Made by a program: the position numbers and the translations under genes. This document shows positions 7,772-19,436 of a stretch of DNA of 19,436 bases, one piece after another. The notes under the pieces were generated by a model, which saw only the letters and a program-made list of their open reading frames with translations, was not told the DNA's origin and did no database searches. The DNA lies in the IMG/VR virus record IMGVR_UViG_3300028610_001064, positions 1 through 19,436 of that record. One strand, 5' to 3'. Each line of letters opens with the position of its first letter. Positions within the stretch are counted from its first letter, which is position 1.

Positions 7772-7779
7772 GTGATATC

Positions 7780-8250
7780 ATGTCCGAGCAAGAATTAGAG
7801 GAAAAGGATTGGAAAGAACTAACTCAAGGGATTAAGAATACTAGAGAGTTATTAAGAGAATTTCCAGATGGTCTTAAAGGATTAATTAATAAATCAAAAG
7901 AAAAAGCTAAAAGTCAAGTGGAAAATGATCTAGATCGTTTATTTACACCCATAAAAAATACCCTTACAGATACGAAAAATAAACTCAAACAAATAATAGG
8001 GATTGATGGAGCTATGAATAGATTAGAAAATAAAACATTACAATTTATTAATGCATTTGCAAATTTTATTACAAAATTTATGTCCACAATAGGGGTTTTA
8101 GATAGAGGAAACGATGCCTATAAAAATCTAGTGGCATGGATGCAATTGCTAGGAAATCCCTTTAACTATGGTCGTATTGGTTGGTTTTGGGGAATATTAT
8201 TACCGCCCGGCTTACCAGGGCCAGGGGATATAACAATAATAGAGAAGTGA
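7780..8250 (+). CDS. Helical tail-region protein with Pro-rich C-terminus (paralog A)
   Basis: Amphipathic helices, W..LLGN, then PPGLPGPG; similar to 8255..8815. Confidence 0.7.
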   Translation: MSEQELEEKDWKELTQGIKNTRELLREFPDGLKGLINKSKEKAKSQVENDLDRLFTPIKNTLTDTKNKLKQIIGIDGAMNRLENKTLQFINAFANFITKFMSTIGVLDRGNDAYKNLVAWMQLLGNPFNYGRIGWFWGILLPPGLPGPGDITIIEK

Positions 8251-8254
8251 TTAA

Positions 8255-8815
8255 ATGTCTATCGCAGCAATAACAGCAAAGGAAATATTTTTAAAAGAAG
8301 CAATTGCCTTTAAGAAGGAGTTTGCTGTGGGATTTGTACAATTTTTTGCCGGTTCTACTATCGATAACATTAAAGAACATGCTAAAGGAGCAATTGAGGG
8401 AATAACTATTCCCATAGAGAATGAACTTACTGCTATAGGCAATCAAATAACGGGAAGTGAGGGTTTAAACGATTTTATAGAATCCTTAAATATAACATTA
8501 CAAAATGCTATAAAAAAAATTATAGAGGATCCTAATATCACACTTTTACTGTTAGGTACTGGTTATTTTATCAATAAACTTACTGATAAAATAGAAGCTT
8601 TTCTCCAAGATCAGATTGATATGTTAGAACTATGGGCTTTGTGGATAGGGAACTTACCGCCCCCACCTACTCCTAATACTCCGGTGTTTGTTCTCCCTAC
8701 TCCCCCTGGAGGTTTTTTCCCTCCTCCGTCAGATTTTACATACCCCGTCATTATCGATTATCCCGGTGGTGACCCATGGTTACCTGGTGGTGGTGGTGGT
8801 TATGGATGGCATTGA
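8255..8815 (+). CDS. Helical tail-region protein with Pro/Gly-rich C-terminus (paralog B)
   Basis: Amphipathic helices, hydrophobic ITLLLLGTGYFI, WALWIGN, then a long Pro-rich tail. Confidence 0.7.
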   Translation: MSIAAITAKEIFLKEAIAFKKEFAVGFVQFFAGSTIDNIKEHAKGAIEGITIPIENELTAIGNQITGSEGLNDFIESLNITLQNAIKKIIEDPNITLLLLGTGYFINKLTDKIEAFLQDQIDMLELWALWIGNLPPPPTPNTPVFVLPTPPGGFFPPPSDFTYPVIIDYPGGDPWLPGGGGGYGWH

Positions 8816-8824
8816 GGTGATTAT

Positions 8825-9358
8825 ATGGCAACAGGTTTAGAAGATGGTAAGATATATCTACTTGAAACTGCGGGAGACTTAGGAGCAAAAACAAACTGGA
8901 TTGTTGCAGGATCGGGAGATCCAGATACTATAGATACTGAACAATTTACAGAAGGATTAACTCTATGTAAATTTAGTTTTCCTATGAAATTCGTTAAGAG
9001 AGGTAAAACAGGTATGGTCCCTTCTACTGCTAGCGGAGGTCTTACGGGAGTATCTAGGACAGCAAATAAATTTTATAATGCTATTATAATGGGTACTACT
9101 GCGACTAGGGCAGCCGGTTATTTAATAGGAGAATTCCTAATGGATGATAGGCATCATGTACCTGTATCAGCAACCTTTAAAGATTATTTTTTAGTTGTGT
9201 ATTATGGAACAAATGATCATGAGCCCTTTACTAATGTTGCTAATTCAAGACTTTCTTATGCCCCGGGAGTAGTCACCGATTTTGAGATCGCTTGGCGTTC
9301 GGATCAGCATATAAATTTAAATGTGAGATTAAACTGGTGGTCGGCATTCACTTCATAG
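8825..9358 (+). CDS. Putative distal tail or tail-tip protein
   Basis: 177-aa beta-rich ORF upstream of the large tail-tip gene; GAGGTGA RBS; function from synteny only. Confidence 0.5.
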   Translation: MATGLEDGKIYLLETAGDLGAKTNWIVAGSGDPDTIDTEQFTEGLTLCKFSFPMKFVKRGKTGMVPSTASGGLTGVSRTANKFYNAIIMGTTATRAAGYLIGEFLMDDRHHVPVSATFKDYFLVVYYGTNDHEPFTNVANSRLSYAPGVVTDFEIAWRSDQHINLNVRLNWWSAFTS

Positions 9359-9501
9359 AGATATTAGTTTTTATATTTATTATTTTTAGTATTATTTATC
9401 AAAATTATCTTTATTTTAAGAATAAACCTAATTTAGGGACTGCATTTGAGTGGATGGGATATGTATGTTTATTTGACATTATAATGAGGTTATTATGGTA
9501 G
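9337..9501 (+). CDS. Small membrane protein with two hydrophobic segments (holin-like size)
   Basis: ILVFIFIIFSIIY and WMGYVCLFDIIMRLLW; start uncertain (GTG 9337, or ATA 9355 overlapping the upstream TAG). Confidence 0.5.
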   Translation: MVGIHFIEILVFIFIIFSIIYQNYLYFKNKPNLGTAFEWMGYVCLFDIIMRLLW

Positions 9502-12500
9502 ACTGTAGAAGATTTGTAGATTTAGGAATAACAAGTGCAAGAAAACCCGCTAATACCCATTTATGGGTTGTGACTACGGCAGGCTATATCTATATTGTTG
9601 ATTCTGTAGATCCAACAAAGATATATAAATCAGAAGATAAATGTGCTACTTGGACGGAGATCGATGATAGGTTCTTTAATATTCAAGCTCTATTACTAGA
9701 TGAACCTAATAATAAACTGTATTATATTTGTAAGGGAGGAACAGACGTTGATGTTCGAGTTCTTACTCTATCAAATGATAATACTACTAGATATGATGAT
9801 TTTCCTGTAAACTCTGCTTTTGCGTTAGATCTTTTAAATGGAGCAGACCTTTTCCTAGCTAATTCTGGGACTCTATATGCCTTAGTATCGTATGAAGATA
9901 CAAATACTCCCTCCCAATATTTTACCGAAGTCTTTATTGATAATGCCGGGAATTTTGTATATGAGGATGGAGCAAGAGATTTTGTTCTAAGTACTAAAGA
10001 TATATCTTATACTGTTGTTATAGATGATGATGATGTATATTTCATTAGAGAAGAAACCAATGGACCTTTGGTATTTCTCTCTAAATTCGTTGCCTCTACA
10101 TCTACCTATACAGAAGAGCATAAGGCTCTGGGAGCTCTTCTTATGTCCGATTCTGAAAGTCAACAAGGGATAGCCTATGATGGATCCGATAACCTTCTAT
10201 TTATTTTGAAGGTTGGGGGGGTCGATAAATTATATAATTATAATATCACAGGGAATGCATTAACACAGATAGGCACTTATGACATAGCCTTAATGTTAGA
10301 TCGTAATAATATAGGAACAGCTCCTAATGAGCTGGAAAAGGCATTTGGTATTGCCGATAAGATTATTTATGAGATTAAGCCTAAGAGAGGTGGAGTTAAC
10401 CAATTACAAGATTTATCTAGTCAATTATCTGGAAATATTATCTGTATTAATGACCGATTTCTCCTAGCTGAAGATAATGGAACGTGGGATGTTTATGAAT
10501 GGATTAATGTAGCTATTGAGATGTCTAATCTCGTCTATACTGGTGGTATTGTCCCTATACCGAAGCTAGGCTCATTTCAAGTACACGATACCCTAAAGGA
10601 TAAATGGAGTGTAAAAGACTCCTTCAAATATTACGATGATAATGATGTGTTGGAAATATGGGCTAAAATTACAGAAGAATATGTAGATCTTTTTAATAAT
10701 TATCATTATGATTTTGATTTTTTCTCCAATGAAATGTATAGAACACCATACAATAAAGTCTATACCGCTGATAATACGGGAGAAAAACAAATAGATATGA
10801 TCGATAATGCCCTCGATTTTTGTTATCAGAGTTCTTCGATAGTTGCAACCGCAACCGATTGGTCTTATACATACACCAGAAATACTGCCTATTTAATGGA
10901 TTTAGGTAGATTCTTAGAAAGGCAAGTTCCTTATATAGAACCTGATTGTAAGACCTGGACTAAAGCCCATGACGGTTTGGGTAAGAATGCCCAGTACTAT
11001 CCCGGTACAGAGAATTTCAAGGAGGATGTTATAGGTTCTTTTCCTTCTGGTTGGAGTGATAATGATGGTGTTGATTGTGAAACTACTATAATCACTTCTT
11101 TTGACAATCATAGAAAGGTTATGCAGTTAGATGACCAAGGAGTAGGAGCCGCTAACCGATGTCAAGCCCACGTTAGCATTACCCAAGGATTAAATACTGA
11201 GATCGAATTCTGGCTTACTAAAGATTCTGTTGCCGCAAATACTATAGGAAGAGTATATATAAGAGAAGCTAGTGATATTTTAGTATATTTACAATGGGAT
11301 AATGATGATCTCGATTATTATGATGGTGCTTATAAAAGTATAAAAGATAATTTCTTGGTAGCTAACACACTCACCCATTTTAGAATCATATTAGATGATA
11401 CTGCAAATACTTTTGATTGTTATATTAATGGAGATTTAGAGGGAAATAATCTCGCTTATCTGAATAATTCTACTTCGGGAGCAGATGAATTTATTATTGT
11501 AACTGGCGATAACGATACAGGATATAAATGTTATTTAGATGCTTTAGGGATTTCTACCGATCCTACTTATATTATTGGGGATAATGTAGTGGCATGGACC
11601 TTAAACGATGGGAATCAAAACGTTCAAATGATTGATATACCTCGATTAGCCTTGGATAGAGGCGGTTATTTTAGTGGTAGTTTAGGAGTTACTAGAGCAA
11701 CAGTAAGATATAAAGACAATACGACTAGTACTAAGCCCACGATCCCCGCTAGTGGAAAGACCGCAGCCGAACTCTTAACAGGTATTATTGAACTTAAGGA
11801 GTTCCGGGATTCTAAGGTAGAAGATTCACCCGAAGCTGACCAACTAGCTACTAACCGCTATGATATTTTTACCTCTACTATTCAGTTTATAGGTCTTAGG
11901 GTAGAGGGTGAAGGGTTTCTTCAAGAGGGTAAAACCGTTTATCTTGAGAATACTGGACAGATAACTATTACAGCGGGACATTTTGTAATATTACGTTATA
12001 GGAGATGGCCTCTCCAAGATGTCACCAATATGGTAGTTTCTGATAATATTATATTCCCTTTTGAATTTAGTTCTTTTGGAGATACTACGAGATTACAGGT
12101 TCATAGTGCTAACTTACAGAGCTTCGAGAACCAAGCAGATATAATCGCTCATCTTACGAGAGAAGGAGGCTTAGCAGTAAGGCTTATTAATGAGACTGGA
12201 GCCGTATCTGTAAAAGGAAGCTTAGTAGAACCCCATACTAATGATAGATCGTTTGAACTTACTGATGGAGATTGTACTGAATGTTTTGGAGCTGTATATG
12301 AGGATGGTATAGCTGAAGGTGCTGAATGTTTAGTAGTTTTTGGAGGAAGAGTTCAAGTATTACTTAAAGATGCGACAGCTTCTACAACAAAGAACTGGGT
12401 AAAGACTTCAGACGTAGCAGGAAGGGCAGACGCTACAGGAGCCTCCCCCGCAGCAGCCCCACAACATTTCCAAGAGGTAGGGCACTGTATTGAAACTAAA

Positions 12501-12548
12501 GCGGCTGATACTGACGTATTAGCTTATATTATGATGCATTTCTTATGA
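9495..12548 (+). CDS. Large multidomain tail-tip/receptor-binding protein
   Basis: 1017 aa: N-terminal propeller-like region with Asp-box-like YKSEDKCATW, hub-like middle, ConA/LamG-like insert (IEFW, THFRIILD..ANTFDCYINGDL), small C-terminal beta domain. Confidence 0.7.
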   Translation: MVDCRRFVDLGITSARKPANTHLWVVTTAGYIYIVDSVDPTKIYKSEDKCATWTEIDDRFFNIQALLLDEPNNKLYYICKGGTDVDVRVLTLSNDNTTRYDDFPVNSAFALDLLNGADLFLANSGTLYALVSYEDTNTPSQYFTEVFIDNAGNFVYEDGARDFVLSTKDISYTVVIDDDDVYFIREETNGPLVFLSKFVASTSTYTEEHKALGALLMSDSESQQGIAYDGSDNLLFILKVGGVDKLYNYNITGNALTQIGTYDIALMLDRNNIGTAPNELEKAFGIADKIIYEIKPKRGGVNQLQDLSSQLSGNIICINDRFLLAEDNGTWDVYEWINVAIEMSNLVYTGGIVPIPKLGSFQVHDTLKDKWSVKDSFKYYDDNDVLEIWAKITEEYVDLFNNYHYDFDFFSNEMYRTPYNKVYTADNTGEKQIDMIDNALDFCYQSSSIVATATDWSYTYTRNTAYLMDLGRFLERQVPYIEPDCKTWTKAHDGLGKNAQYYPGTENFKEDVIGSFPSGWSDNDGVDCETTIITSFDNHRKVMQLDDQGVGAANRCQAHVSITQGLNTEIEFWLTKDSVAANTIGRVYIREASDILVYLQWDNDDLDYYDGAYKSIKDNFLVANTLTHFRIILDDTANTFDCYINGDLEGNNLAYLNNSTSGADEFIIVTGDNDTGYKCYLDALGISTDPTYIIGDNVVAWTLNDGNQNVQMIDIPRLALDRGGYFSGSLGVTRATVRYKDNTTSTKPTIPASGKTAAELLTGIIELKEFRDSKVEDSPEADQLATNRYDIFTSTIQFIGLRVEGEGFLQEGKTVYLENTGQITITAGHFVILRYRRWPLQDVTNMVVSDNIIFPFEFSSFGDTTRLQVHSANLQSFENQADIIAHLTREGGLAVRLINETGAVSVKGSLVEPHTNDRSFELTDGDCTECFGAVYEDGIAEGAECLVVFGGRVQVLLKDATASTTKNWVKTSDVAGRADATGASPAAAPQHFQEVGHCIETKAADTDVLAYIMMHFL

Positions 12549-12727: not shown

Positions 12728-12902
12728 GCAGATATTAGAACTGCTACCTGAAAGTGAGCAAAAAACAAAAGTTCTAGCTACTCTAAACGTTAAAGCTGAG
12801 AAGACCAAGAGTTTCATATTAAAATGTAAAAAAATAGGTAGATATTTAGTGGAAATCTATTTGATAATCAGTTATCTCATCCAGACGCTAGGGATTGTTT
12901 AA
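12708..12902 (+). CDS. Small protein with C-terminal hydrophobic helix
   Basis: GGAGGTGA RBS favours ATG 12708 over GTG 12696; ends YLVEIYLIISYLIQTLGIV; stop overlaps the stop of the convergent minus-strand ORF. Confidence 0.6.
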   Translation: MRMKKFRQILELLPESEQKTKVLATLNVKAEKTKSFILKCKKIGRYLVEIYLIISYLIQTLGIV

Positions 12903-13093
12903 TCTAACCCGCATTTTTTATCAAATCTAGCTATAAGCCCTGTAGAGTAGGGTTTGATAGGAGGAAAGCATGTTCCAAAATCAGTTACCCCATTCCAATA
13001 CCAAAAATAGAGTTTCTGTTTTTCCTTACTCCATTTATCATGAACTTCTTTATTTTCTTTCCTTATATCTTTTCCACATTCTTCACAACTCAT
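12899..13093 (-). CDS. 64-aa Cys-containing hypothetical protein
   Basis: CEECG at the N-terminus; GAGGT RBS; ATGA coupling. Confidence 0.7.
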   Translation of the reverse strand: MSCEECGKDIRKENKEVHDKWSKEKQKLYFWYWNGVTDFGTCFPPIKPYSTGLIARFDKKCGLD

Positions 13094-13212
13094 GTTTCAA
13101 CCTCTAACTTTTTTACTCTTTTCATTAATTTTAAATAGTTTTTATATTGATTGGTAGCTTTCTTTTCTATTTCTTTAATCTTTTCAAATAGTTGTTCTAT
13201 TAACTCTAACAT
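13090..13212 (-). CDS. 40-aa coiled-coil microprotein (not in track)
   Basis: AGGAGG RBS; MLELIEQLFEKIKEIEKKATNQYKNYLKLMKRVKKLEVET. Confidence 0.65.
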   Translation of the reverse strand: MLELIEQLFEKIKEIEKKATNQYKNYLKLMKRVKKLEVET

Positions 13213-13324
13213 TTATTTTTTCCTCCTTTTCATTTGGACATTCTTCAGGAAAAATATTACCATAATCCAAATATACTCTTAAACAATTCTTAAAGTAGGG
13301 GCACCTCGTTTCACAATCTATCAT
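13184..13324 (-). CDS. 46-aa Cys-rich microprotein (not in track)
   Basis: ATGA coupling; MIDCETRCPYFKNCLRVYLDYGNIFPEECPNEKEEKINVRVNRTTI. Confidence 0.65.
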   Translation of the reverse strand: MIDCETRCPYFKNCLRVYLDYGNIFPEECPNEKEEKINVRVNRTTI

Positions 13325-13512
13325 TTCATCAAATCCAATATGTCTATTATTTTCTGCACTAAATCTTCTCTAGGACCACGATGGGATCCTCCTCCCAAGT
13401 CCTTATAGAAGTTCCTTAATTTCTCTATGTTGACATTTTTTCGCAACCATTCCTTTTGTCTTCTTATCCTACCATACTCTCTATTATATTGTTTGCGATT
13501 TCTTGTCACCAT
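13321..13512 (-). CDS. 63-aa basic hypothetical protein
   Basis: GGAGG RBS; Arg-rich N-terminus. Confidence 0.7.
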   Translation of the reverse strand: MVTRNRKQYNREYGRIRRQKEWLRKNVNIEKLRNFYKDLGGGSHRGPREDLVQKIIDILDLMK

Positions 13513-13684
13513 TCTGTCTTCCCTCCCACTTCTGTATTAATTTTCTCAGAGGCTCAAAACCAAAAGGAATAAGAGAGGGAAATTCATTTAAAGAACATAG
13601 GTCTTGCAGGAACTCCGCGATTGAAGCTTTATAACCTTCCACATACCCATCATCATAAACTTCTTTCGCAAGTTTTTTATTCAT
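13484..13684 (-). CDS. 66-aa protein, paralog of 16673..16885
   Basis: Start reassigned to ATG 13684 after AGGAGGAG; shares AEFLxDL and RKxIxKWEGR with 16673..16885. Confidence 0.7.
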   Translation of the reverse strand: MNKKLAKEVYDDGYVEGYKASIAEFLQDLCSLNEFPSLIPFGFEPLRKLIQKWEGRQNGDKKSQTI

Positions 13685-14384
13685 CGTGCTCCTCCTTGTC
13701 GGTTGCGTCCGACAGCCGCTTATAAAGCTTTCTAAATATTCTCTGAAATTTCTTGGTATTCTTTGATTCAAAATAATCATCTAAAGCATTAAAGAAGTCC
13801 CGCAGCACCTCTTCTAAGGTTATGATTCTTGGCATGGCAACATTATGTCGGAAGTCTTTTAGCTCATCTACTCTGAGTCTATTCCTCTCAGTTAGTTCTT
13901 TCAGCTCCGGAATCTTTTCCTTTATGATATTTGCAAGATCTACCCACCACGTGTCATGAGCAAGTTTCTGTTCTGTAAATTGTTCTTTCAGCTCTTTACT
14001 ATTCTTATTAACAGCTTCTAATGTCTCGTTTCTAAATTTGCAAAACTTATTTCTCCATTGTTTAAGCTCTTTTTCTTGAAATCCATATAAATCATTCACT
14101 AATTTAACCCGCTTTTCGAGAGCCTCTAATCTCTCATTATAATTTGAATGCCCATTCACATTATATTTCTCCAAATTTGAAAGCTTCTTTTCGAGAGCCC
14201 CGATCCTTGGTTCAAGATTCTCTTTATGATAAAGTGCATGTCCTGTCTCATTCTCATATTTAATTTCAAGCTTCTGCTCCAACACTCCAAGTCTTCGCAC
14301 TATTTCTTGATAATCCTTAAGAACTAAATCACTCAACTCATTGTATTGTTTCTTTAGTTCTTCTTCCATATTAAAGTCGCTCAT
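13677..14384 (-). CDS. 235-aa coiled-coil protein ending in RLSDATDKEE
   Basis: Recurrent R[LI]xxLExx[LV] trimeric coiled-coil motifs (RLGVLEQKL, RIGALEKKL, RLEALEKRV, RIITLEEVL). Confidence 0.8.
   Translation of the reverse strand: MSDFNMEEELKKQYNELSDLVLKDYQEIVRRLGVLEQKLEIKYENETGHALYHKENLEPRIGALEKKLSNLEKYNVNGHSNYNERLEALEKRVKLVNDLYGFQEKELKQWRNKFCKFRNETLEAVNKNSKELKEQFTEQKLAHDTWWVDLANIIKEKIPELKELTERNRLRVDELKDFRHNVAMPRIITLEEVLRDFFNALDDYFESKNTKKFQRIFRKLYKRLSDATDKEEHDE
13689..13719 (-). repeat. Junction palindrome repeat, copy 1
   Basis: Minus strand GCGGC-TGTCGG-ACGCAA-CCGACA-AGGAGGAG; identical to 16688-16718. Confidence 0.95.
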
Positions 14385-14557
14385 GGGGTGTCCAACCTCT
14401 TTTCAAATAACTTAGGATAATGTTGGCATGTAAGTAGCCTCCAACCATGTTTATCTATCTCATATATTCCCATTTCAACCCTATAACTTAATTTTAGTTG
14501 TCCTATACACTCATTACATATACAGTCAATTAAGATTGGTTTAATTTTAGACACCAT
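14381..14557 (-). CDS. 58-aa Cys/His microprotein (not in track)
   Basis: GAGGTGA RBS; TAATG and ATGA coupling; CICNEC...TCQH. Confidence 0.65.
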   Translation of the reverse strand: MVSKIKPILIDCICNECIGQLKLSYRVEMGIYEIDKHGWRLLTCQHYPKLFEKRLDTP

Positions 14558-14673
14558 TAGGGTAATGTCACCTCTCTAAACTCGGGCTCCCACAGAGTCC
14601 AACTCAAGGTACTATAAATGAAGCCATGATCAACCGCCTCTAAATAATGGTAAAAATCCGGTACATCACTCAT
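14557..14673 (-). CDS. 38-aa hypothetical protein
   Basis: Start reassigned to ATG 14673 (GAGGT RBS, ATGA overlap); MSDVPDFYHYLEAVDHGFIYSTLSWTLWEPEFREVTLP. Confidence 0.6.
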   Translation of the reverse strand: MSDVPDFYHYLEAVDHGFIYSTLSWTLWEPEFREVTLP

Positions 14674-14759
14674 GGTGTATACCTCGCCATTGTAATACAT
14701 AAAAAAATTAAAAATATAGTAAATAACATCCATAAACAAAACTCTGTCTCATCGCTCAC
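14670..14759 (-). CDS. 29-aa single-TM peptide (not in track)
   Basis: GTGA overlap upstream and ATGA downstream; MSDETEFCLWMLFTIFLIFLCITMARYTP. Confidence 0.6.
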   Translation of the reverse strand: MSDETEFCLWMLFTIFLIFLCITMARYTP

Positions 14760-15040
14760 TCTAATCGCCTCACGATCCTATAAAGTTTTGATTGTCCTGG
14801 AATTCTAATCATATTATCATTTAATATTCCTTGATTAAGATCTTCTACTTTTACTACAAATTCTAAGTCTTTTTTAATTTGATTATTAATAGCATTTCTA
14901 ATACATTCTGCTATAGATGCGTAATATCCCCATTTTATAAGCTTTTCTATTGTTGTCCTTACTTTACGCGTAATATTGACAGTCATAACCAATAAAGCAT
15001 GATTAGTATTGTCCTTTGTCTCTAACCTTCTATTTCCCAT
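14756..15040 (-). CDS. Ribbon-helix-helix (CopG/Arc/MetJ) DNA-binding protein
   Basis: MTVNITRKVRTTIEKLIKWGYYASIAECIRNAI matches the archaeal RHH pattern (LxxxGxYxSxSExIRxAI). Confidence 0.85.
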   Translation of the reverse strand: MGNRRLETKDNTNHALLVMTVNITRKVRTTIEKLIKWGYYASIAECIRNAINNQIKKDLEFVVKVEDLNQGILNDNMIRIPGQSKLYRIVRRLE

Positions 15041-15568
15041 TTATTTCCACTCCAGTTTGCCTATAACCCATGCGGATTTTTCACTCACTATTACCCTCGT
15101 ACCCCCTTCCTTAATACTCTCTGTCCTAATAACAAACTGTTTAGCTAAAAAGGAACATTTGTTATCATAGCCTATGAGCTTGTAAGACTTACTAGAGTAG
15201 TCCGTACACTCTCGAACATCTACAAAGTTCTGAGTCTGTACTACTTTCGGCAAGGGCTTTGAGTCGGTTGGTACTGGCTTTTCAACCACTCTCGTAGGTT
15301 CTGCAGTTGGATTGGTCATCGATACAACCCTGTCCCCTACCCATGTATTTTGCCCACTTACTGATTTCTCACCCTCCCAAGCATTAGGAAAACCAGGACT
15401 ACTGATTCTTATCTTAGGTTTCTCCTCATCCTGTATGTTAAATAAATGTCTAGCTTGGTAAGCTTTAACAAAACCTTCGAGAGCTTCCGCAATCCTTTCC
15501 AGATAACCATTTCTCTTTTCTTGGGTATCATTATTAATACCCTCCCATGTAGGTTGATATTCACTCAT
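15041..15568 (-). CDS. 175-aa hypothetical protein
   Basis: Low-complexity linker and a compact beta-rich C-terminal domain; no confident family. Confidence 0.75.
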   Translation of the reverse strand: MSEYQPTWEGINNDTQEKRNGYLERIAEALEGFVKAYQARHLFNIQDEEKPKIRISSPGFPNAWEGEKSVSGQNTWVGDRVVSMTNPTAEPTRVVEKPVPTDSKPLPKVVQTQNFVDVRECTDYSSKSYKLIGYDNKCSFLAKQFVIRTESIKEGGTRVIVSEKSAWVIGKLEWK

Positions 15569-15744
15569 AATCTTAAGAACCCCTCTATATTGTTTCTAAG
15601 TTTTTGAGCATTTTCCGTATAGCCTAACCAACCAGTAAGGAACTCATATAGTTCATGATAACAATCATTTATATGGTCACACTCGTTTGTTTCACAATCT
15701 ATACTCTGATAATTCCCAATATTTAGTTTAATTGTTAATCTCAT
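15565..15744 (-). CDS. 59-aa hypothetical protein (not in track)
   Basis: ATGA coupling at both ends; MRLTIKLNIGNYQSIDCETNECDHINDCYHELYEF... Confidence 0.7.
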   Translation of the reverse strand: MRLTIKLNIGNYQSIDCETNECDHINDCYHELYEFLTGWLGYTENAQKLRNNIEGFLRL

Positions 15745-15911
15745 TTCAATAATGTCTCCAATACTTTTTTAAAACTTTTTATTTTAATTTCTCTCGAATC
15801 AAAAACCTCTTTACTTCGTATAAGAGAAGACTTTAGACTTTCATTCTCTCTCTCCATAAAAGAGACTTTTTCACGAATATAATTTCTAACAATTTTTAGT
15901 TCTTCACTCAT
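15741..15911 (-). CDS. 56-aa hypothetical protein (not in track)
   Basis: GGAGG RBS; ATGA coupling at both ends; MSEELKIVRNYIREKVSFMERENESLK... Confidence 0.7.
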   Translation of the reverse strand: MSEELKIVRNYIREKVSFMERENESLKSSLIRSKEVFDSREIKIKSFKKVLETLLK

Positions 15912-15923
15912 TTCAATTCCTCC
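15903..15923 (-). repeat. 21-bp junction repeat GGAGGAATTGAAATGAGTGAA, copy 1
   Basis: Identical to 16165-16185; contains RBS, stop and start. Confidence 0.9.
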
Positions 15924-16057
15924 TCTATATCAAGTTCCCAGTCCTCATCAATTAAGACTTGTCTAATTTTCTTCATAGTATCAATAATTTCTTGATACAT
16001 GCCTGGTCTTTTAAAAGATATTGTTAAAATTACTTCCACATTTGTTTTTACATTCAT
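15908..16057 (-). CDS. 49-aa hypothetical protein (not in track)
   Basis: GGAGG RBS; ATGA coupling; MNVKTNVEVILTISFKRPGMYQEIIDTMKKIRQVLIDEDWELDIEEELK. Confidence 0.7.
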   Translation of the reverse strand: MNVKTNVEVILTISFKRPGMYQEIIDTMKKIRQVLIDEDWELDIEEELK

Positions 16058-16173
16058 TTAATTTCATCCTCCATTAATATTTTTTTAACCGATTTCGGGT
16101 CTCGGGACGCTTTATCGGTTTTAAGACCATACTTTTCTTTAAATTCCTTACTAAACCCCTTCCATTCACTCAT
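16054..16173 (-). CDS. 39-aa hypothetical protein (not in track)
   Basis: GGAGG RBS; ATGA coupling; MSEWKGFSKEFKEKYGLKTDKASRDPKSVKKILMEDEIK. Confidence 0.65.
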   Translation of the reverse strand: MSEWKGFSKEFKEKYGLKTDKASRDPKSVKKILMEDEIK

Positions 16174-16185
16174 TTCAATTCCTCC
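16165..16185 (-). repeat. 21-bp junction repeat GGAGGAATTGAAATGAGTGAA, copy 2
   Basis: Identical to 15903-15923. Confidence 0.9.
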
Positions 16186-16331
16186 ACTTTATAATCCTCT
16201 AAATTTGCAATTATATGATCTCTCAATTCATTAAAAAACTCTTTTCCAACTGAGAAATCAAACAACATTTTCTTTGTAGTTAAATCCATCAATTGTAGAT
16301 GAATCCAACCATCTTTTTCAAATATTTTCAA
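16170..16331 (-). CDS. 53-aa hypothetical protein, TTG start (not in track)
   Basis: GGAGGT RBS 8 nt upstream of TTG; MKIFEKDGWIHLQLMDLTTKKMLFDFSVGKEFFNELRDHII... Confidence 0.65.
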   Translation of the reverse strand: MKIFEKDGWIHLQLMDLTTKKMLFDFSVGKEFFNELRDHIIANLEDYKVEELK

Positions 16332-16458
16332 TAAATTCTACCTCCAATATTTTTTTCATTCTTTTTTTATTTCTTTTTTTTAACTCTTTAATTTCTGATC
16401 CGGGAATTGCCAGTTTATCTCGCAACTGTTCACTTAAAAAATATATTTTATAGCTCAT
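16318..16458 (-). CDS. 46-aa basic hypothetical protein (not in track)
   Basis: ATGA coupling; MSYKIYFLSEQLRDKLAIPGSEIKELKKRNKKRMKKILEVEFIENI. Confidence 0.6.
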   Translation of the reverse strand: MSYKIYFLSEQLRDKLAIPGSEIKELKKRNKKRMKKILEVEFIENI

Positions 16459-16676
16459 GATAGATCCCCCTTAAATTGTATAGAGACCTTATAACAAAAC
16501 TCTCTAAGACTACATCTAACAAGACAGTTTACCCCTTTCCCCTTAAGTTCATTAATTAAGCCAAAACAAGAAGGTCTTCTCTCAGCAAGACTCTTTACCC
16601 TTCTACCACAAACATATAGTCTTAACTCTATCCTCTCATATCTTTTGGTTTTGTATAATTTAGGTTTTAATATCAT
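16455..16676 (-). CDS. 73-aa Cys-rich protein
   Basis: Start reassigned to ATG 16676 (ATGA overlap); PSCFG...CLVRC....FC metal-binding-like pattern. Confidence 0.7.
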   Translation of the reverse strand: MILKPKLYKTKRYERIELRLYVCGRRVKSLAERRPSCFGLINELKGKGVNCLVRCSLREFCYKVSIQFKGDLS

Positions 16677-16885
16677 AGCCCCATCAACTCCTCCTTGTCG
16701 GTTGCGTCCGACAGCCGCCCTTCCCATTTCTCTATCGTTTTCCTTACTTCAGACCAACACAATCCCGTTGATGGCTTTTTATATGCTCTTTTCAAGTCTT
16801 TAAGGAACTCTGCTCTCTGTTTACTTAGTTGTGTCTCAACAAACTCCTCGCATACTTTACTTCTTATCCACTCTTTACCTGCCAT
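16673..16885 (-). CDS. 70-aa protein, paralog of 13484..13684, ending in RLSDATDKEE
   Basis: Start reassigned to ATG 16885 (GGGGTGA RBS, TAATG overlap). Confidence 0.7.
   Translation of the reverse strand: MAGKEWIRSKVCEEFVETQLSKQRAEFLKDLKRAYKKPSTGLCWSEVRKTIEKWEGRLSDATDKEELMGL
16688..16718 (-). repeat. Junction palindrome repeat, copy 2
   Basis: 31 of 31 identical to copy 1. Confidence 0.95.
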
Positions 16886-16992
16886 TAGAACATCACCCCT
16901 AGATATAGTGCTAGTACCGCTAAAAAGTACATCATAAAGAAGATTGATAGTAGGGTGAGCAGGCCGCATACGACCCAGTTAGATTTGGACAT
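16885..16992 (-). CDS. 35-aa single-TM peptide (not in track)
   Basis: MSKSNWVVCGLLTLLSIFFMMYFLAVLALYLGVMF; TAATG overlap with the next gene. Confidence 0.65.
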   Translation of the reverse strand: MSKSNWVVCGLLTLLSIFFMMYFLAVLALYLGVMF

Positions 16993-17164
16993 CTTTCTTT
17001 TCCTCTCTTTTCTTTTCTAACACTATCATTTCTTCAGCTAAATTGAATGGAAATCTACTCCTTCCTGGAGGACAATCTGGATTAGTACAACCCCAATAAT
17101 GTTGGTATCCACAATAAGACATAGGTTCTCCGCATCTGATACATTCATGTTCCTCTTTACTCAT
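16979..17164 (-). CDS. 61-aa zinc-ribbon protein
   Basis: CIRCGEPM...YWGCTNPDC (topoisomerase C4-like); start reassigned to ATG 17164. Confidence 0.75.
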   Translation of the reverse strand: MSKEEHECIRCGEPMSYCGYQHYWGCTNPDCPPGRSRFPFNLAEEMIVLEKKREEKKDVQI

Positions 17165-17349
17165 CGCTGGGCCTCCAAACATTCATAATCATAATTATGC
17201 TGACAATATTCGTTCAGCTTACAGATATTACATAGGTCCCTTTGTTCTTTCTCTTCAATAAACTTAAACAGCTCCAGTCTCTTACTAAAAGTAGCCTTAC
17301 CATAGAAAGGGTGAATTTTTTCATTGAATTCTTCAAAATCTTTATACAT
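17161..17349 (-). CDS. 62-aa protein with a C-terminal Cys cluster
   Basis: CNICKLNEYC......C; GGAGG RBS. Confidence 0.7.
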   Translation of the reverse strand: MYKDFEEFNEKIHPFYGKATFSKRLELFKFIEEKEQRDLCNICKLNEYCQHNYDYECLEAQR

Positions 17350-17363
17350 TTTAGTTAGCCTCC
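17346..17363 (-). repeat. 18-bp junction repeat GGAGGCTAACTAAAATGT, copy 1
   Basis: Identical to 17667-17684; variant at 18428-18443. Confidence 0.85.
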
Positions 17364-17492
17364 AGTTAGTATAAAACCTACTCTTTTCTTTAGATTAGTA
17401 GTTTTTTGTTTAGCTTTTATTAAATCAGTATCCATTAACATCCTAATTTCTGTAAGCTCTTCATAAATCTCTAATAATACATTACTACTCAT
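17355..17492 (-). CDS. 45-aa hypothetical protein (not in track)
   Basis: AAGGAGG RBS; MSSNVLLEIYEELTEIRMLMDTDLIKAKQKTTNLKKRVGFILTGG. Confidence 0.65.
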   Translation of the reverse strand: MSSNVLLEIYEELTEIRMLMDTDLIKAKQKTTNLKKRVGFILTGG

Positions 17493-17670
17493 CGCTGTCC
17501 TCCTTCTCAAACAACATTTCATATATTTGTCCCATCCACAGACAGTCTCGACACATCAAGATTATAGGTGAGTCCCCTGTTATATTTGAGCCTTTACAAT
17601 TAGGACAATGAACCTGAACTTTCTTACCATGATTCTCTCTAGTATGAATCAAATCATAATTAAATAACAT
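17485..17670 (-). CDS. 61-aa zinc-ribbon protein
   Basis: CPNCKGSNI...CRDC. Confidence 0.75.
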   Translation of the reverse strand: MLFNYDLIHTRENHGKKVQVHCPNCKGSNITGDSPIILMCRDCLWMGQIYEMLFEKEDSDE

Positions 17671-17684
17671 TTTAGTTAGCCTCC
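17667..17684 (-). repeat. 18-bp junction repeat GGAGGCTAACTAAAATGT, copy 2
   Basis: Identical to 17346-17363; overlaps palindrome copy 3 through the shared GGAGG. Confidence 0.85.
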
Positions 17685-17776
17685 TTGCCGGTTGCGTCGG
17701 GCTGCCGCTCCTCAGCTTCTTTACATGGACAATAAGGATAATGGTCTCCGTACCGGCATTTTAGACAATCAACCAT
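17672..17776 (-). CDS. 34-aa Cys-rich microprotein ending in RQPDATGKEAN (not in track)
   Basis: AGGAGG RBS; MVDCLKCRYGDHYPYCPCKEAEERQPDATGKEAN. Confidence 0.65.
   Translation of the reverse strand: MVDCLKCRYGDHYPYCPCKEAEERQPDATGKEAN
17680..17708 (-). repeat. Junction palindrome repeat, copy 3 (diverged)
   Basis: Minus strand GCGGC-AGCCCG-ACGCAA-CCGGCA-AGGAGG; loop invariant, one compensatory T-A to C-G change, two mismatches. Confidence 0.85.
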
Positions 17777-17779
17777 TAT

Positions 17780-17920
17780 TTATGTTTCCTCCTTATTATT
17801 CTTAGAAATTAACTCTCCGCATTTATAACAATGATTCTTTCCTAAGATTTTCTCAACACAAGTACCTTCCTCTCTTTTCTTTCTACACTCCTTTAAGGTC
17901 TCAACAATACAGATTGTCAT
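17780..17920 (-). CDS. 46-aa Cys-rich microprotein (not in track)
   Basis: GGAGG RBS; MTICIVETLKECRKKREEGTCVEKILGKNHCYKCGELISKNNKEET. Confidence 0.65.
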   Translation of the reverse strand: MTICIVETLKECRKKREEGTCVEKILGKNHCYKCGELISKNNKEET

Positions 17921-17924
17921 TTTC

Positions 17925-18149
17925 CTAAGCCTCCACCTTGTCGGTTGCGTCCGACAGTCGCTCTTCCTTATATATTAGGCTAGGATGCTTGGTACAGAAC
18001 TCGGCAACGACCAGAGCAAAATCATCGGAAGGTAAGTGAGCGTGCGGGTATAGCTCTGCTCTGAATACTTTATGTCGCTCGGTGTTATGGGCTTCTTTTT
18101 CCTTCTCAGACCAATCATAAATGATCTTACCATTAATTCTCCAAGGCAT
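17925..18149 (-). CDS. 74-aa hypothetical protein ending in RLSDATDKVEA
   Basis: GAGGT RBS; TAATG overlap. Confidence 0.7.
   Translation of the reverse strand: MPWRINGKIIYDWSEKEKEAHNTERHKVFRAELYPHAHLPSDDFALVVAEFCTKHPSLIYKEERLSDATDKVEA
17931..17961 (-). repeat. Junction palindrome repeat, copy 4
   Basis: 29 of 31 identical to copy 1; both differences lie outside the palindrome. Confidence 0.95.
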
Positions 18150-18430
18150 TATGCTAGGACCTCTTTAACTATAATTTGATATTTCTTATCCGGATCAAAA
18201 AAGAGGGTAGATGTTTGGGGGATCCGGAAATACATATAATTATTTTTTTTATCTAAATAAGAAGGAGAATCATTCCAGGTAGTAATAAAACCGTCAGGCA
18301 TAGAAGAAGCATTAATTTTCCTTCGGTCCGATTCCTCTTGATTCTTCCATGAACAATCCACACAGATACCTTCTGAAGTAAAAGTGTCCTTTCTGACCTC
18401 ACACTGAGGGCATATTTCTAAATTAACCAT
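18149..18430 (-). CDS. 93-aa protein with zinc ribbon and possible AbrB-like C-terminus
   Basis: CPQC...CVDC; C-terminal YFRIP...DPDKKYQIIVKEV resembles swapped-hairpin DNA binders. Confidence 0.65.
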   Translation of the reverse strand: MVNLEICPQCEVRKDTFTSEGICVDCSWKNQEESDRRKINASSMPDGFITTWNDSPSYLDKKNNYMYFRIPQTSTLFFDPDKKYQIIVKEVLA

Positions 18431-18670
18431 TTAATTAGCCTCCCTTTTCTCTATTCTTGAGATTATAGTATTTAGAAAGTCCCGCATTTTAATCATCTCT
18501 TCAACACTAGTAGCCATTTCAATTAAGTCGGGAGCCTCTTGAGTATTAGCATAAAACTCCGCATAGATTGCCTCATCCTTGACTGAACCAGAGAATAGGG
18601 TAAGATTTCTATACCCTGTAGTGTCTTCATACGCATCCATTACTAAACTTTTATTAGCCATTTTTTTCAC
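18431..18670 (-). CDS. First gene of the leftward operon, hypothetical
   Basis: GTG 18670 or ATG 18661; downstream of a BRE-TATA promoter. Confidence 0.7.
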   Translation of the reverse strand: MKKMANKSLVMDAYEDTTGYRNLTLFSGSVKDEAIYAEFYANTQEAPDLIEMATSVEEMIKMRDFLNTIISRIEKREAN

Positions 18671-19199: not shown

Positions 19200-19325
19200 A
19201 TGATGTCTGAAACTATAGCAAAAGAATTCCTAGAGAAGAAAGAAATATTCAACTCATTAGGGTTTGAATTAGTAGGGACTAAAGACATTAATGAAGACAC
19301 CATCTACTTAGTAAAAGAGAAATAA
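19200..19325 (+). CDS. 41-aa hypothetical protein (not in track)
   Basis: MMSETIAKEFLEKKEIFNSLGFELVGTKDINEDTIYLVKEK; reads into the terminal repeat. Confidence 0.55.
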   Translation: MMSETIAKEFLEKKEIFNSLGFELVGTKDINEDTIYLVKEK

Positions 19326-19436
19326 TTTCTCAATCCTACCCAGACAGATAAGGTTGAACACTTCAGCCGAAAGTACCTAGTTCTTGTTTGATTCGTTCAA
19401 CCCTCACCTTATTATTAATCATTAGCAGACTTCACT
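19293..19436 (+). repeat. Terminal direct repeat, right copy (144 bp)
   Basis: Identical to 1-144. Confidence 0.97.

What the first reader, a model, noticed from the sequence alone, without database searches (positions are those of the whole stretch)
13689..17961. Dispersed GC-rich palindromic module at gene ends in the accessory operon: candidate cassette-recombination site or RNA regulatory element
Seen: four same-orientation copies (13689-13719, 16688-16718, 17680-17708, 17931-17961) of minus-strand GCGGC-TGTCGG-ACGCAA-CCGACA-AGGAGG. It is 21/31 GC in an AT-rich genome, with 6-bp inverted arms around an invariant asymmetric 6-nt core. Each copy sits in the last codons of an unrelated ORF and abuts or includes a Shine-Dalgarno-like sequence ahead of the next gene. 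Copies 1 and 2 are identical, copy 4 differs only outside the stem, and copy 3 shows a compensatory T-A to C-G change. Known: inverted arms around a 6-8 bp asymmetric spacer is the layout of tyrosine-recombinase sites, and hairpins next to an RBS or repeated through long operons act in translational control, processing or antitermination. Inference: this is a portable junction that either lets microgene cassettes be excised and shuffled (integron-like, by a host recombinase, since none is encoded here) or coordinates expression of a 29-gene transcript. I do not recognise it as a described element.
Basis: partly seen in the sequence, partly recalled or inferred. Interest (0 to 1): 0.85.

Follow-up and report, generated by a model that had tools for sequence, protein, structure and literature searches.

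The report
Portable hairpin at Asgard-virus gene junctions
A small GC-rich hairpin module has recently spread to four gene ends, each time just ahead of the next gene's ribosome-binding site, in a small tailed virus of Asgard archaea; two related viruses carry variants whose stems change in a paired way while the loop never changes, so it is a real, undescribed structured element, most likely read as RNA, and not a peptide motif or an integron-type site.

Summary
In detail: four same-strand copies sit at the stated coordinates (0 of 200 shuffles give even one match).

The window is a complete, terminally redundant 19.3-kb verdandivirus. It is nearly identical to the published VerdaV6 contig.

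All copies lie in the same reading frame. The codons are strongly atypical for this genome (P about 3.5e-5), and homologues of three host genes in relatives lack the tail. So nucleotides, not a peptide, are what is kept.

The module is absent from most relatives. Single variant copies occur in two related contigs (L162, L170). Across the six copies, 3 of 6 stem pairs show changes on both sides. The ACGCAA loop, a 5' GCG and the 3' Shine-Dalgarno sequence never vary.

Comparison with empty sites shows in-frame insertions of different sizes placed directly 5' of a Shine-Dalgarno sequence. Two of them come with gene-content changes.

Best reading (confidence 0.4): a portable hairpin, recognised through its loop, that acts on RNA next to the ribosome-binding site and spreads by short-homology recombination.

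Main rival (0.25): a REP-like selfish mini-element moved by a host enzyme.

An integron-like or Xer-type site, a peptide motif and a CRISPR-repeat mimic are not supported.

The parts
13689..13719 (-). Copy 1. 5' GCGGC, 6-bp stem TGTCGG/CCGACA, loop ACGCAA, then AAGGAGGAG (SD). Hairpin core at 13697-13714. Lies in the last codons of ORF A.
   Evidence: Empty-site comparison with L170 and with the tails of A-family homologues.
16688..16718 (-). Copy 2, identical to copy 1 over 31 nt. Hairpin core at 16696-16713. Lies in the last codons of ORF B, between the native SD (TGGGAAGGG) and the start of the next gene.
   Evidence: Empty junctions in L162 and L170.
17680..17708 (-). Copy 3, the diverged copy (arms AGCCCG/CCGGCA, two unpaired positions), at the end of the 34-aa ORF C. 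It is orthologous to the single copy in L162.
17931..17961 (-). Copy 4. Two differences from copies 1 and 2, both outside the stem. Hairpin core at 17939-17956. Lies at the end of ORF D. Position 17958 is the only substitution between this genome and the VerdaV6 contig over 15.2 kb.
   Evidence: Empty sites in L162 and L125.
13677..14384 (-). Host ORF A (235 aa, coiled-coil-like). Its tail is K-L-Y-K-[RLSDATD]-K-E-E-H-D-E. Homologues end in K-Y-L-K-E-E-(H/E)-D-E without the insert.
16673..16885 (-). Host ORF B (70 aa), a member of the 'KWEG[RK]' family. A paralogue at 13484-13684 and homologues in L162, L170 and L125 lack the module.
17672..17776 (-). Host ORF C (34 aa, Cys-rich).
17925..18149 (-). 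Host ORF D (74 aa). A 79%-identical homologue (P0009, in L162) and a 41%-identical one (in L125) end differently (…EGLKN…) and have no module.
13484..13684 (-). Gene directly downstream of copy 1 (a B-family paralogue). Its SD is the 3' end of the module.
16455..16676 (-). Gene directly downstream of copy 2 (73 aa, basic and Cys-rich). It is conserved in L162, L170 and other contigs.
17485..17670 (-). Gene directly downstream of copy 3. It is the first of a five-gene block that is absent from L162.
17780..17920 (-). Gene directly downstream of copy 4. It is absent from L162, where D' is followed directly by C'.
12899..18661 (-). Accessory operon of 28 tightly packed or overlapping microgenes that holds all four copies. 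Most junctions have a recognisable SD 5-14 nt before the start codon.

Best explanation
The module is a nucleic-acid element, not a peptide motif.

Anatomy: a short hairpin with a 6-bp stem free to vary in sequence, an invariant ACGCAA loop closed by G-C, and a conserved 5' RAG-CGG. It is fused on its 3' side to a Shine-Dalgarno sequence (AAG-GAGG).

Placement: it has been placed, always in the sense orientation and in frame, immediately 5' of the ribosome-binding site of the next gene. This occurs at several junctions of the accessory operon of a sub-lineage of verdandiviruses.

Shown:
- It has been gained at junctions that are empty in relatives.
- Three near-identical copies arose recently in this genome.
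- The inserted stretch differs in length between sites.
- Stem pairing is maintained through changes on both sides, while the loop is invariant.

Inferred:
- It spreads by short-homology recombination or template switching between SD-bearing junctions. This is also how cassettes are exchanged there.
- It is retained because the transcribed hairpin is recognised through its loop by a trans-acting factor, either an RNA-binding protein or a ribonuclease of virus or host.
- That factor would set translation, processing or stability of the adjacent cistron in the long polycistronic mRNA, in the manner of a phage translational operator.
For: Kept at nucleotide level, not peptide level:
- The codons of RLSDATDKEE are extremely atypical for this genome (P=3.5e-5). 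GC3 is 9 of 10, against 0.28 genome-wide.
- The peptide varies non-conservatively between copies (RLSDATD, RQPDATG, REPDATG, RVRDATR). Only residues encoded by invariant bases are kept.
- Homologues of A, B and D lack the tail.

Structure:
- Six copies in three genomes form standard pairs in 91.7% of cells, against 78.5% in shuffles (0 of 500 reach the observed value). Slid controls give 17-42%.
- 3 of 6 pairs changed on both sides (7 of 500 shuffles reach this).
- 8 of 12 stem columns vary, against 0 of 6 loop columns. My hypergeometric estimate is P about 0.011.
- Other GC-rich perfect hairpins are rare in these genomes, 0-3 per genome.

Placement:
- All six copies are in the sense strand and abut an SD.
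- The shared reading frame follows from a general habit of these operons. The SD core GAGG is read as a GAG codon in 39 of 49 junctions without the module.

Gain and spread:
- Empty sites exist for copies 1, 2 and 4.
- The inserted stretch is about 24 nt at copy 1 and 36-39 nt at copy 2. At copy 4 the tail is replaced and a new gene comes with it. This fits recombination better than a fixed-end transposon.
- Other indels in this operon lie among other junction-repeat families.
Against: - No RNA data and no candidate binding factor exist.
- Rfam gives no match.
- Folding energies are not better than those of shuffles.
- In L170 the minimum-energy fold uses a different register.
- Predicted accessibility of the SD and AUG hardly changes when the 24 nt are removed in silico.
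- Copy 3 has lost two of six pairs, so constraint in place is weak.
- Most relatives have no copy, so any function is dispensable.
- The genes downstream of the copies share no evident function.
- Covariation rests on only three lineages, and it cannot tell RNA from single-stranded DNA.
Confidence: 0.4

Rival explanations
1. Selfish miniature mobile element, REP- or MITE-like. A roughly 24-nt hairpin unit is mobilised in trans, as single-stranded DNA, by a host-encoded enzyme (an HUH/Y1 transposase of the IS200/IS605 or RAYT type, or similar). The enzyme would recognise the hairpin and loop and insert the unit at RAG^GAGG, that is, into Shine-Dalgarno sequences. The unit is tolerated because it is a multiple of three and regenerates the SD.
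For: - Sporadic distribution, and a recent burst of three near-identical copies in one genome.
- At copy 1 only about 24 nt are added, with both neighbouring genes conserved.
- The codon before CGG is AAG or GAG in 5 of 6 copies, against a 14% background (P about 0.002 for 4 of 5 independent sites). The module therefore sits between RAG and (A)AG-GAGG like a short target duplication.
- A conserved 5' box plus a hairpin recalls REPs (PMC2817692, PMC3116915).
- The old copy 3 is decaying.
- The only substitution between two strains lies in a copy.
Against: - The inserted stretch differs between sites (24 nt, 36-39 nt, or tail replacement plus a gene).
- No transposase is found in the virus.
- The exact hairpin is not repeated in any of 185,579 species-representative genomes. 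It gave 15 single hits in unrelated GC-rich bacteria, about the number expected by chance by my estimate. Variant stems were not searched.
- REPs are extragenic, number in the hundreds per genome, and their loops are not the conserved part.
Confidence: 0.25
2. A passive recombination linker. The module is only a long, GC-rich stretch of junction homology that is carried along when cassettes are swapped by homologous recombination between junctions. It would work like PeSLs or the 'boundary sequences' of phages, with no function of its own.
For: - Relative to L162, all three copies in the comparable region lie at gene-content breakpoints.
- Other junction-repeat families exist: D3 and D5 in the window, and similar ones in L131, L125 and L127. 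D3 lies within a segment absent from L162.
- PeSL precedent: PMC2839356, PMC4122927.
Against: - It does not explain why stems stay paired through double changes while the loop is invariant.
- It does not explain a GC-rich hairpin in an AT-rich genome.
- Copy 1 is an insertion without any cassette change.
- The breakpoint association is not significant: 7 of 16 junctions are breakpoints, P about 0.06.
Confidence: 0.12
3. A site-specific recombination site, integron attC-like or Xer/dif-like, used by a host tyrosine recombinase to excise and insert microgene cassettes.
For: - The layout is inverted arms around an invariant asymmetric 6-nt centre.
- The copies sit at gene 3' ends, in the same orientation.
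- attC sites are likewise recognised as folded single strands (from general knowledge, not tested here).
Against: - The arms differ between copies within and between genomes (TGTCGG, AGCCCG, AGCCGG, TGCGAG), so they are not conserved binding arms.
- The whole hairpin is 18 nt, against 57-141 nt for attC, and it has no RYYYAAC/GTTRRRY boxes.
- Only 4 of 27 junctions carry it.
- No integrase or attI is present.
- Insert boundaries differ from site to site.
Confidence: 0.05
4. A double-stranded DNA operator. The palindrome is bound by a dimeric regulator, for example the ribbon-helix-helix (RHH) protein at 14756-15040.
For: - Perfect 6-bp inverted repeats spaced by 6 bp.
- An RHH-like gene is present.
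Against: - Half-site sequence is not conserved while complementarity is.
- The RHH gene is conserved in relatives that have no copy.
- The sites lie inside coding ends, far from the promoter region.
- The centre is asymmetric.
Confidence: 0.05
5. A protein-level C-terminal motif (RLSDATDKEE), such as a docking or degradation tag, shared by four unrelated proteins.
For: All copies are in one reading frame and lie at C-termini.
Against: - Codon choice is far from genome usage (P=3.5e-5).
- Changes between copies are non-conservative.
- Homologues lack the tail.
- No peptide-level match with other codons is found in any relative.
- The shared frame is explained by the SD being read as GAG in 80% of junctions.
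Confidence: 0.03
6. A translational-bypass ('byp' or T4 gene 60-like) insert. The ribosome takes off at the RAG codon, stalls at the rare CGG/CGA codon, skips the hairpin and lands on the matching downstream codon, which restores the ancestral tail.
For: - Matching triplets flank the insert in 5 of 6 copies (AAG…AAG or GAG…GAG).
- The next codon is the rare Arg codon CGG/CGA (about 6% of Arg codons for CGG).
- A hairpin follows.
- Precedents are GC-rich mobile inserts in AT-rich mitochondrial genes and T4 gene 60 (PMC8211752; 10.1101/2022.08.31.505936).
Against: - No stop codon follows the take-off codon.
- Every insert is a multiple of three and reads through in frame, so bypass is not needed.
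- The matching GAG is simply the SD.
Confidence: 0.02
7. A solitary CRISPR-repeat mimic (RNA anti-CRISPR) or other host-derived repeat.
For: It is a dispersed, GC-rich, hairpin-forming unit of about 30 nt in a virus.
Against: - No array or repeat family with this hairpin is found in 185,579 species-representative genomes.
- No other IMG/VR contig carries it.
- Only about 18 positions are conserved.
Confidence: 0.02

Closest known systems
PeSLs (promoter-early stem-loops) of T4-type phages (PMC2839356, PMC4122927)
   Same: Both are short conserved regulatory cassettes with a stem-loop, repeated at junctions between small non-essential genes in a hyperplastic region. Both are found at indel and replacement boundaries between close relatives, and both are thought to mediate modular shuffling by homologous recombination.
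   Different: PeSLs are intergenic and consist of a sigma-70 promoter plus a terminator stem-loop. This module lies inside the last codons of a gene and consists of a hairpin plus an SD. It has no promoter or U-tract, its stem covaries and its loop is invariant. The virus is archaeal, and mini-circles have not been tested.
REP / REPIN elements and RAYT transposases of bacteria (PMC2817692, PMC3116915, PMC3337134)
   Same: Both are very short GC-rich palindromes with a conserved 5' box. Both are dispersed at gene ends within operons, and both may be mobilised in trans as folded single strands.
   Different: REPs are extragenic, present in hundreds of copies in cellular chromosomes, often paired in inverted orientation, and linked to a RAYT gene. 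Here there are 1-4 copies in viral genomes, all in one orientation and inside coding sequence. No RAYT is known, and no host copies were found for the exact hairpin.
In-frame palindromic inserts in coding genes: Rickettsia palindromic elements, and mitochondrial GC clusters and byps (PMC10969869, PMC8211752, PMC6649704)
   Same: Both are mobile palindromic inserts that land inside protein-coding genes without breaking the frame, and both are GC-rich in an AT-rich genome.
   Different: Those elements are 27-150 nt or longer and are scattered within genes. This one is about 24-31 nt and is tied to the SD at the gene's 3' end.
Phage translational operators (MS2/PP7 coat-protein hairpins; the T4 gp43 operator hairpin next to its SD). 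From general knowledge, not tested here.
   Same: Both have a covarying stem with a sequence-specific loop, placed at or beside the ribosome-binding site of the regulated gene.
   Different: Those are single-copy and have a known binding protein. Here there are several copies, no known binding partner and no expression data.
Integron attC sites
   Same: Both sit at the 3' end of gene cassettes, are recognised as folded single strands rather than by arm sequence, and lie in one orientation.
   Different: attC sites are 57-141 nt with paired core sites and extrahelical bases, need IntI and attI, and occur at every cassette. None of these features is met here.

Membership tests
Any Rfam family | A match to a curated covariance model | tested here: not met
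   cmscan of the whole window at E<=1 gave 0 matches.
Integron attC | An adjacent integron integrase (IntI) and attI | tested here: not met
   There is no integrase or recombinase Pfam hit in any ORF of 58 aa or more that was scanned. No unassigned ORF is long enough apart from the 348-aa and 1017-aa ORFs in the structural operon.
Integron attC | A 57-141-nt imperfect palindrome with R''/L'' and L'/R' core sites (RYYYAAC … GTTRRRY) | tested here: not met
   The hairpin is 18 nt. ACGCAAC and GTTGCGT do not fit RYYYAAC or GTTRRRY (sequence).
Integron attC | One site at the 3' end of every cassette | tested here: not met
   Only 4 of 27 internal junctions carry it. Relatives have 0 or 1 copy.
Tyrosine-recombinase core site (Xer/dif type) | Two conserved recombinase-binding arms flanking a 6-8-bp overlap | tested here: not met
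   The arms differ between copies while staying complementary, and they are 6 bp, not about 11 bp.
Tyrosine-recombinase core site (Xer/dif type) | A cognate recombinase acts on it | not testable with these tools
   None is encoded in the virus. Host XerA cannot be assayed here.
REP / RAYT | High copy number in the host chromosome, extragenic | tested here: inconclusive
   The exact 18-mer gave only 15 single hits in unrelated GC-rich bacteria among 185,579 species genomes.
REP / RAYT | A conserved 5' tetranucleotide followed by a palindrome | tested here: met
   GCG is invariant and the next base is G in 5 of 6 copies. The codon before is RAG in 5 of 6.
REP / RAYT | An associated RAYT or IS200/IS605 TnpA gene | not testable with these tools
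   None is in the viral genomes. Host genomes could not be searched with a structure model.
PeSL | A composite of an early promoter and a terminator stem-loop | tested here: not met
   The module is inside coding sequence, has no U-tract, and its other half is an SD, not a promoter.
PeSL | Flanks indels or replacements between close relatives | tested here: inconclusive
   3 of 3 copies in the window-L162 shared region lie at breakpoints, but 7 of 16 junctions are breakpoints (P about 0.06). Copy 1 shows no gene change.
PeSL | Mini-circles formed by recombination between copies | not testable with these tools
   This needs reads or PCR.
Translational bypass element (gene 60 / byp) | A take-off codon followed by a stop or unreadable codon, a matching landing triplet, and a hairpin | tested here: not met
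   Matching triplets and a hairpin are present, but there is no stop and all copies read through in frame.
Verdandivirus (Asgard-archaeal Caudoviricetes), for the genome that carries the module | Identity with a published member; a roughly 20-kb circular genome with HK97-type capsid protein, portal and terminase | tested here: met
   L180 is Ga0114923_10001063, named VerdaV6 in 10.1101/2021.07.29.453957. It differs from the window by 1 substitution and 1 indel in 15.2 kb. Weak Pfam hits to terminase, portal and encapsulin/HK97 families. A 144-nt direct terminal repeat.

The most novel reading that the evidence does not exclude
This is an ultra-small (about 24 nt) structure-dependent mobile element that homes into Shine-Dalgarno sequences (RAG^GAGG) of Asgard-virus operons. 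It inserts in frame and regenerates the ribosome-binding site. It is recognised through its invariant ACGCAA loop by an as yet unknown host or viral enzyme. [quoted passage not shown]
Probability: 0.2. Interest if true: 0.75.

Novelty: new variant of a known kind. Interest (0 to 1): 0.5.

Why it matters
Verdandiviruses are among the few known viruses of Asgard archaea, and nearly all of their accessory genes and control signals are uncharacterised.

The module is a structured element whose gains can be traced, with empty and filled sites, within one virus lineage. That makes it a concrete handle on two open questions:
- how these viruses turn over their microgene cassettes;
- whether Asgard hosts or their viruses have a hairpin-recognising factor (a translational regulator, a ribonuclease or a single-strand transposase).

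It also shows that a repeated in-frame 'peptide' can be a by-product of a nucleotide element. This matters for annotating ORFan microgenes in metagenomic viruses.

If it proves to be a true SD-homing mobile element, it would be one of the smallest mobile units known.

Tried and rejected
1. Pattern scans of IMG/VR with exact and degenerate patterns. Only the window's own contig carries the module. Every other hit was a chance match in a GC-rich contig.
2. Scan of 185,579 species genomes with the 18-mer. It gave 15 scattered single hits, about the number I estimate from chance. No host repeat family or CRISPR array was found.
3. Rfam at E<=1 and ARAGORN: nothing.
4. Terminase-based relatives from IMG/VR and JGI metagenomes, L122-L144. 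There is no copy within 8 mismatches or by covariance model. Their own junction repeats are plain SD-start consensus sequences without a hairpin.
5. Peptide-level search for RLSDATDKEE-like tails in six-frame translations of relatives: none.
6. Thermodynamic significance of the hairpin: not distinguishable from shuffles of the same composition.
7. The idea that the hairpin insulates or exposes the SD. Predicted unpaired probabilities of the SD and AUG with and without the 24 nt differ little and not consistently. Rejected as unsupported.
8. The same reading frame as evidence for a peptide. Rejected, because 39 of 49 ordinary junctions read the SD as GAG.
9. Exact-protein look-ups for neighbours of the L170 and L162 copies: no further contigs.
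10. Pfam scans of structural and accessory proteins for a recombinase, transposase or RNA-binding domain: none. There was only a weak RHH hit.

Full report
**What the window is.** Bases 1-144 repeat at 19293-19436, so this is a complete, terminally redundant or circular genome of about 19.29 kb. The plus strand (252-12548) encodes terminase-like, portal-like and HK97/encapsulin-like capsid proteins and tail proteins. These Pfam hits are weak but consistent.

The minus strand from 18661 to 12899 holds 28 tightly packed or overlapping microgenes. Most junctions have a recognisable Shine-Dalgarno (SD) sequence 5-14 nt before the start codon.

The contig is IMGVR_UViG_3300028610_001064. The same genome was assembled from at least four samples. 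One of these assemblies, Ga0114923_10001063, is named VerdaV6 in 'Viruses of Asgard archaea' (10.1101/2021.07.29.453957). It differs from the window by one substitution and one single-base indel in 15.2 kb. The host assignment (Asgard archaea) therefore rests on that paper, not on anything tested here.

**The observation.** The 18-nt hairpin core occurs three times exactly, and no match appeared in any of 200 shuffles. Copies 1 and 2 are identical over 31 nt. Copy 4 differs twice, both times outside the stem. Copy 3 differs at four or five positions.

Three points need adding:
- All copies are in one reading frame, giving R-L-S-D-A-T-D-K-E/V-E.
- Copy 3 has two broken pairs besides the compensatory T-A to C-G change, and it no longer folds into the canonical hairpin.
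- The hairpin (-8.6 kcal/mol as RNA, about -5.5 as DNA) is not significantly more stable than shuffles of the same GC-rich composition.

**Peptide or nucleotides?** The evidence points to nucleotides.
- For the peptide RLSDATDKEE the genome would normally use AT-rich codons. The codons actually used have P=3.5e-5 under the genome's own usage, and GC3 is 9 of 10 against 0.28.
- A 79%-identical homologue of ORF D (P0009, in L162) and a 41%-identical one (in L125) end in …EGLKN… without the tail.
- Homologues of ORF A end in K-Y-L-K-E-E-(H/E)-D-E, whereas the window has K-L-Y-K-[RLSDATD]-K-E-E-H-D-E.
- Members of the ORF B family end in K-W-E-G-K/R without it.
- No relative encodes a similar peptide with other codons.

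The shared frame needs no peptide function. In 39 of 49 junctions without the module (window, L170, L162) the SD core GAGG is read as a GAG codon of the upstream gene. Anything anchored to the SD is therefore likely to share a frame (0.8^5 is about 0.33 for five independent sites).

**Relatives.** Terminase-based relatives at 70-90% identity (L122-L144) have almost entirely different accessory genes. None has a copy, either within 8 mismatches or by covariance model.

Two other contigs do carry a copy:
- L162 (ENA, 8.7 kb) was found through the ORF D homologue. It shares the regulatory region and the start of the operon at 82% nucleotide identity, but its structural module is unrelated. It has one copy at the end of the ORF C orthologue, with a perfect 5-bp stem GCCGG/CCGGC.
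- L170 (Logan, 19.8 kb) has structural proteins mostly 78-94% identical to the window's and encodes a PAPS reductase. It has one copy at the end of an unrelated 122-aa ORF, with a perfect 6-bp stem TGCGAG/CTCGCA.

No further copy was found in IMG/VR with patterns built on the invariant positions. The exact hairpin is not repeated in any of 185,579 species-representative genomes.

**Structure.** In the six-copy alignment (A1) the invariant columns are a 5' GCG, the closing G-C pair, the whole ACGCAA loop and the AGG.GG of the SD. Eight of 12 stem columns vary.
- With the hairpin imposed, 91.7% of cells pair, against 78.5% in shuffles (0 of 500 reach this) and 17-42% when the partner is slid.
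- Three of six pairs have changes on both sides: U-A/C-G, C-G/G-C and G-C/A-U. Only 7 of 500 shuffles reach this.
- A variable but paired stem with an invariant loop (my estimate: P about 0.011 for 0 of 6 variable loop columns) marks a folded single strand recognised through its loop. It does not fit a duplex site with two conserved binding arms.

Caveats:
- Only three lineages contribute: {1, 2, 4}, {3, L162} and {L170}.
- L170 alone supplies two of the three covarying pairs.
- The minimum-energy fold of L170 uses another register.
- RNA and single-stranded DNA cannot be told apart from these data.

**How the module got there.** Empty and filled sites were compared for copies 1, 2 and 4.
- Copy 1. 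In L170 the junction between an ORF that ends with the A-family tail and the B-family paralogue runs …TAT CTC AAG GAG GAG CAC G ATG…. It is identical to the window from CAAGGAGGAGCACGATGAA onward, but it lacks the hairpin. With the protein tails, this indicates an in-frame gain of about 24 nt and no change in gene content. The upstream flank is too diverged to fix the 5' edge at the nucleotide level.
- Copy 2. In L162 and L170 the gene homologous to 16455-16676 is preceded by …GGAGG GTAAATC ATG…. The window has an extra 36-39 nt (hairpin, a new SD, and TTGATGGGGCT) between the native SD TGGGAAGGG and the start.
- Copy 4. The tail of D is replaced from the point where homology with L162 stops (window 17970, just 5' of the module). 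An extra gene (17780-17920) follows. In L162, D' abuts C' directly.
- Copy 3. It is shared with L162, but it is followed by five genes that L162 lacks.

So all three copies in the region comparable with L162 sit at breakpoints. However, 7 of 16 junctions there are breakpoints, which gives P about 0.06.

The codon 5' of CGG is AAG or GAG in 5 of 6 copies, against a 14% background in gene tails (P about 0.002 for 4 of 5 independent sites). The unit therefore lies between RAG and (A)AG-GAGG, like an insertion into an SD with a short repeat.

The differing sizes of the gained stretch argue for short-homology recombination or template switching between SD-bearing junctions rather than a fixed-end transposon. 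Other junction-repeat families lie in other variable segments (D3 and D5 in the window; similar ones in relatives).

The only substitution between the window and VerdaV6 lies in copy 4, at the very position where copy 4 differs from copies 1 and 2. The chance of one substitution in 15.2 kb falling in the 124 nt of copies is about 0.008. This fits gene conversion or a local hotspot, but it is a single event.

**Mechanism.**

Shown:
- A nucleotide-level, structure-constrained, portable module.
- It is always in the sense strand, directly 5' of an SD and in frame.
- It is dispensable, because most relatives lack it.
- It expanded recently in this genome.

Inferred (confidence 0.4): the transcribed hairpin is the binding or cleavage site of a trans-acting factor that reads the ACGCAA loop and so affects translation, processing or stability of the neighbouring cistron. 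It would spread by recombination at SD microhomology. The simple idea that it keeps the SD accessible found no support.

The main rival (0.25) is a REP-like selfish mini-element moved as single-stranded DNA by a host enzyme. That view fits the sporadic distribution, the burst, the decay of copy 3 and the RAG repeat. It fits the variable insert sizes and the lack of host copies less well.

A purely passive recombination linker (0.12) does not explain the covariation or the invariant loop.

Integron/Xer-type sites, a duplex operator, a peptide tag, a bypass element and a CRISPR-repeat mimic each fail specific tests. These are listed under rival explanations and membership tests.

**Comparison with known systems and novelty.** In behaviour the module is closest to the PeSL cassettes of T4-type phages (PMC2839356, PMC4122927). 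In size and form it is closest to REPs (PMC2817692, PMC3116915). In living inside coding sequence it resembles in-frame palindromic inserts such as Rickettsia palindromic elements or mitochondrial GC clusters (PMC10969869, PMC8211752). It is a member of none of these.

I found no description of it in the verdandivirus paper; a text search there for 'hairpin', 'palindrom' and 'repeat' returned only CRISPR and terminal repeats. Rfam has no match. I rate it a new variant of a known kind: a dispersed palindromic junction element. Interest is moderate. It is well supported as a real element, but it is based on six copies, with no expression data and no identified partner.

Noticed in passing
window 1-144 and 19293-19436; L180: There is a 144-nt direct terminal repeat, so the window is a complete genome. 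It is nearly identical to Ga0114923_10001063, published as verdandivirus VerdaV6, and it recurs in at least four samples with 0-2 differences.
   Followed up: yes
window 16673-16885 and 13484-13684; L162 7296-7719; L170 13131-13782; L125 1904-2104: A family of roughly 66-79-aa proteins ends in K/E-W-E-G/E-K/R. The codons TGG-GAG-G double as the SD of the next gene, so part of the 'conserved motif' may be a translation signal. L170 has three such genes in tandem, and L162 has two adjacent genes with this ending.
   Followed up: partly
window 15903-15930, 16049-16076, 16165-16192 (family D3); 17341-17363, 17662-17684, 18421-18443 (family D5): Other junction-repeat families (SD, spacer, start and first codons) are present. 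The three D3 copies lie at successive junctions in a three-gene segment absent from L162. The D5 junction GGAGGCTAACTAAAATG also recurs in L170. This suggests general cassette turnover by recombination at junctions.
   Followed up: partly
L162 1-5600 versus 5690-8266: L162 shares the divergent regulatory region, two small plus-strand genes and the start of the accessory operon with the window at about 82% nucleotide identity. Its structural genes are unrelated, with only one 40% protein hit. The early/accessory module therefore seems to be exchanged between virus lineages.
   Followed up: partly
L170 8079-8097: There is a perfect tRNA T-arm-like hairpin (GGAGGG-TTCGAAT-CCCTCC) inside the 122-aa ORF that also hosts the L170 copy, about 110 nt upstream of it. 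ARAGORN finds no tRNA gene. It may be a tRNA-gene fragment, such as a remnant of an attachment site.
   Followed up: partly
window 17958 and 16013: These are the only two differences from VerdaV6 in 15.2 kb. One is A versus G inside copy 4 (CGA versus CGG, both Arg). The other is a one-base indel in a T run, which changes the ORF calls around 15908-16057.
   Followed up: yes
window 13677-14384 (ORF A, residues about 165-215); P0002-P0004, P0007: A block of about 50 residues (…ELKELSERNRLRVDELKDFRHN.A.PRI…) is 58-69% identical in otherwise different proteins of 190-362 aa from other metagenomes. One of these is labelled as from a Candidatus Aerophobetes MAG. It is a shuffled conserved domain of unknown function.
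   Followed up: no
L167-L169 (GC 22-23%): Homologues (79% identity) of the 73-aa protein encoded at window 16455-16676 occur in very AT-rich contigs. One of these, L167, also carries RNA-ligase and DNA-ligase genes. This microgene is therefore shared across quite different mobile elements.
   Followed up: no
L125 1012-1090: Three tandem 29-nt repeats (…TATCATAATTATATTCGTCAATTTCT…) lie in the accessory region of a relative. They may be iterons or a regulatory array.
   Followed up: no
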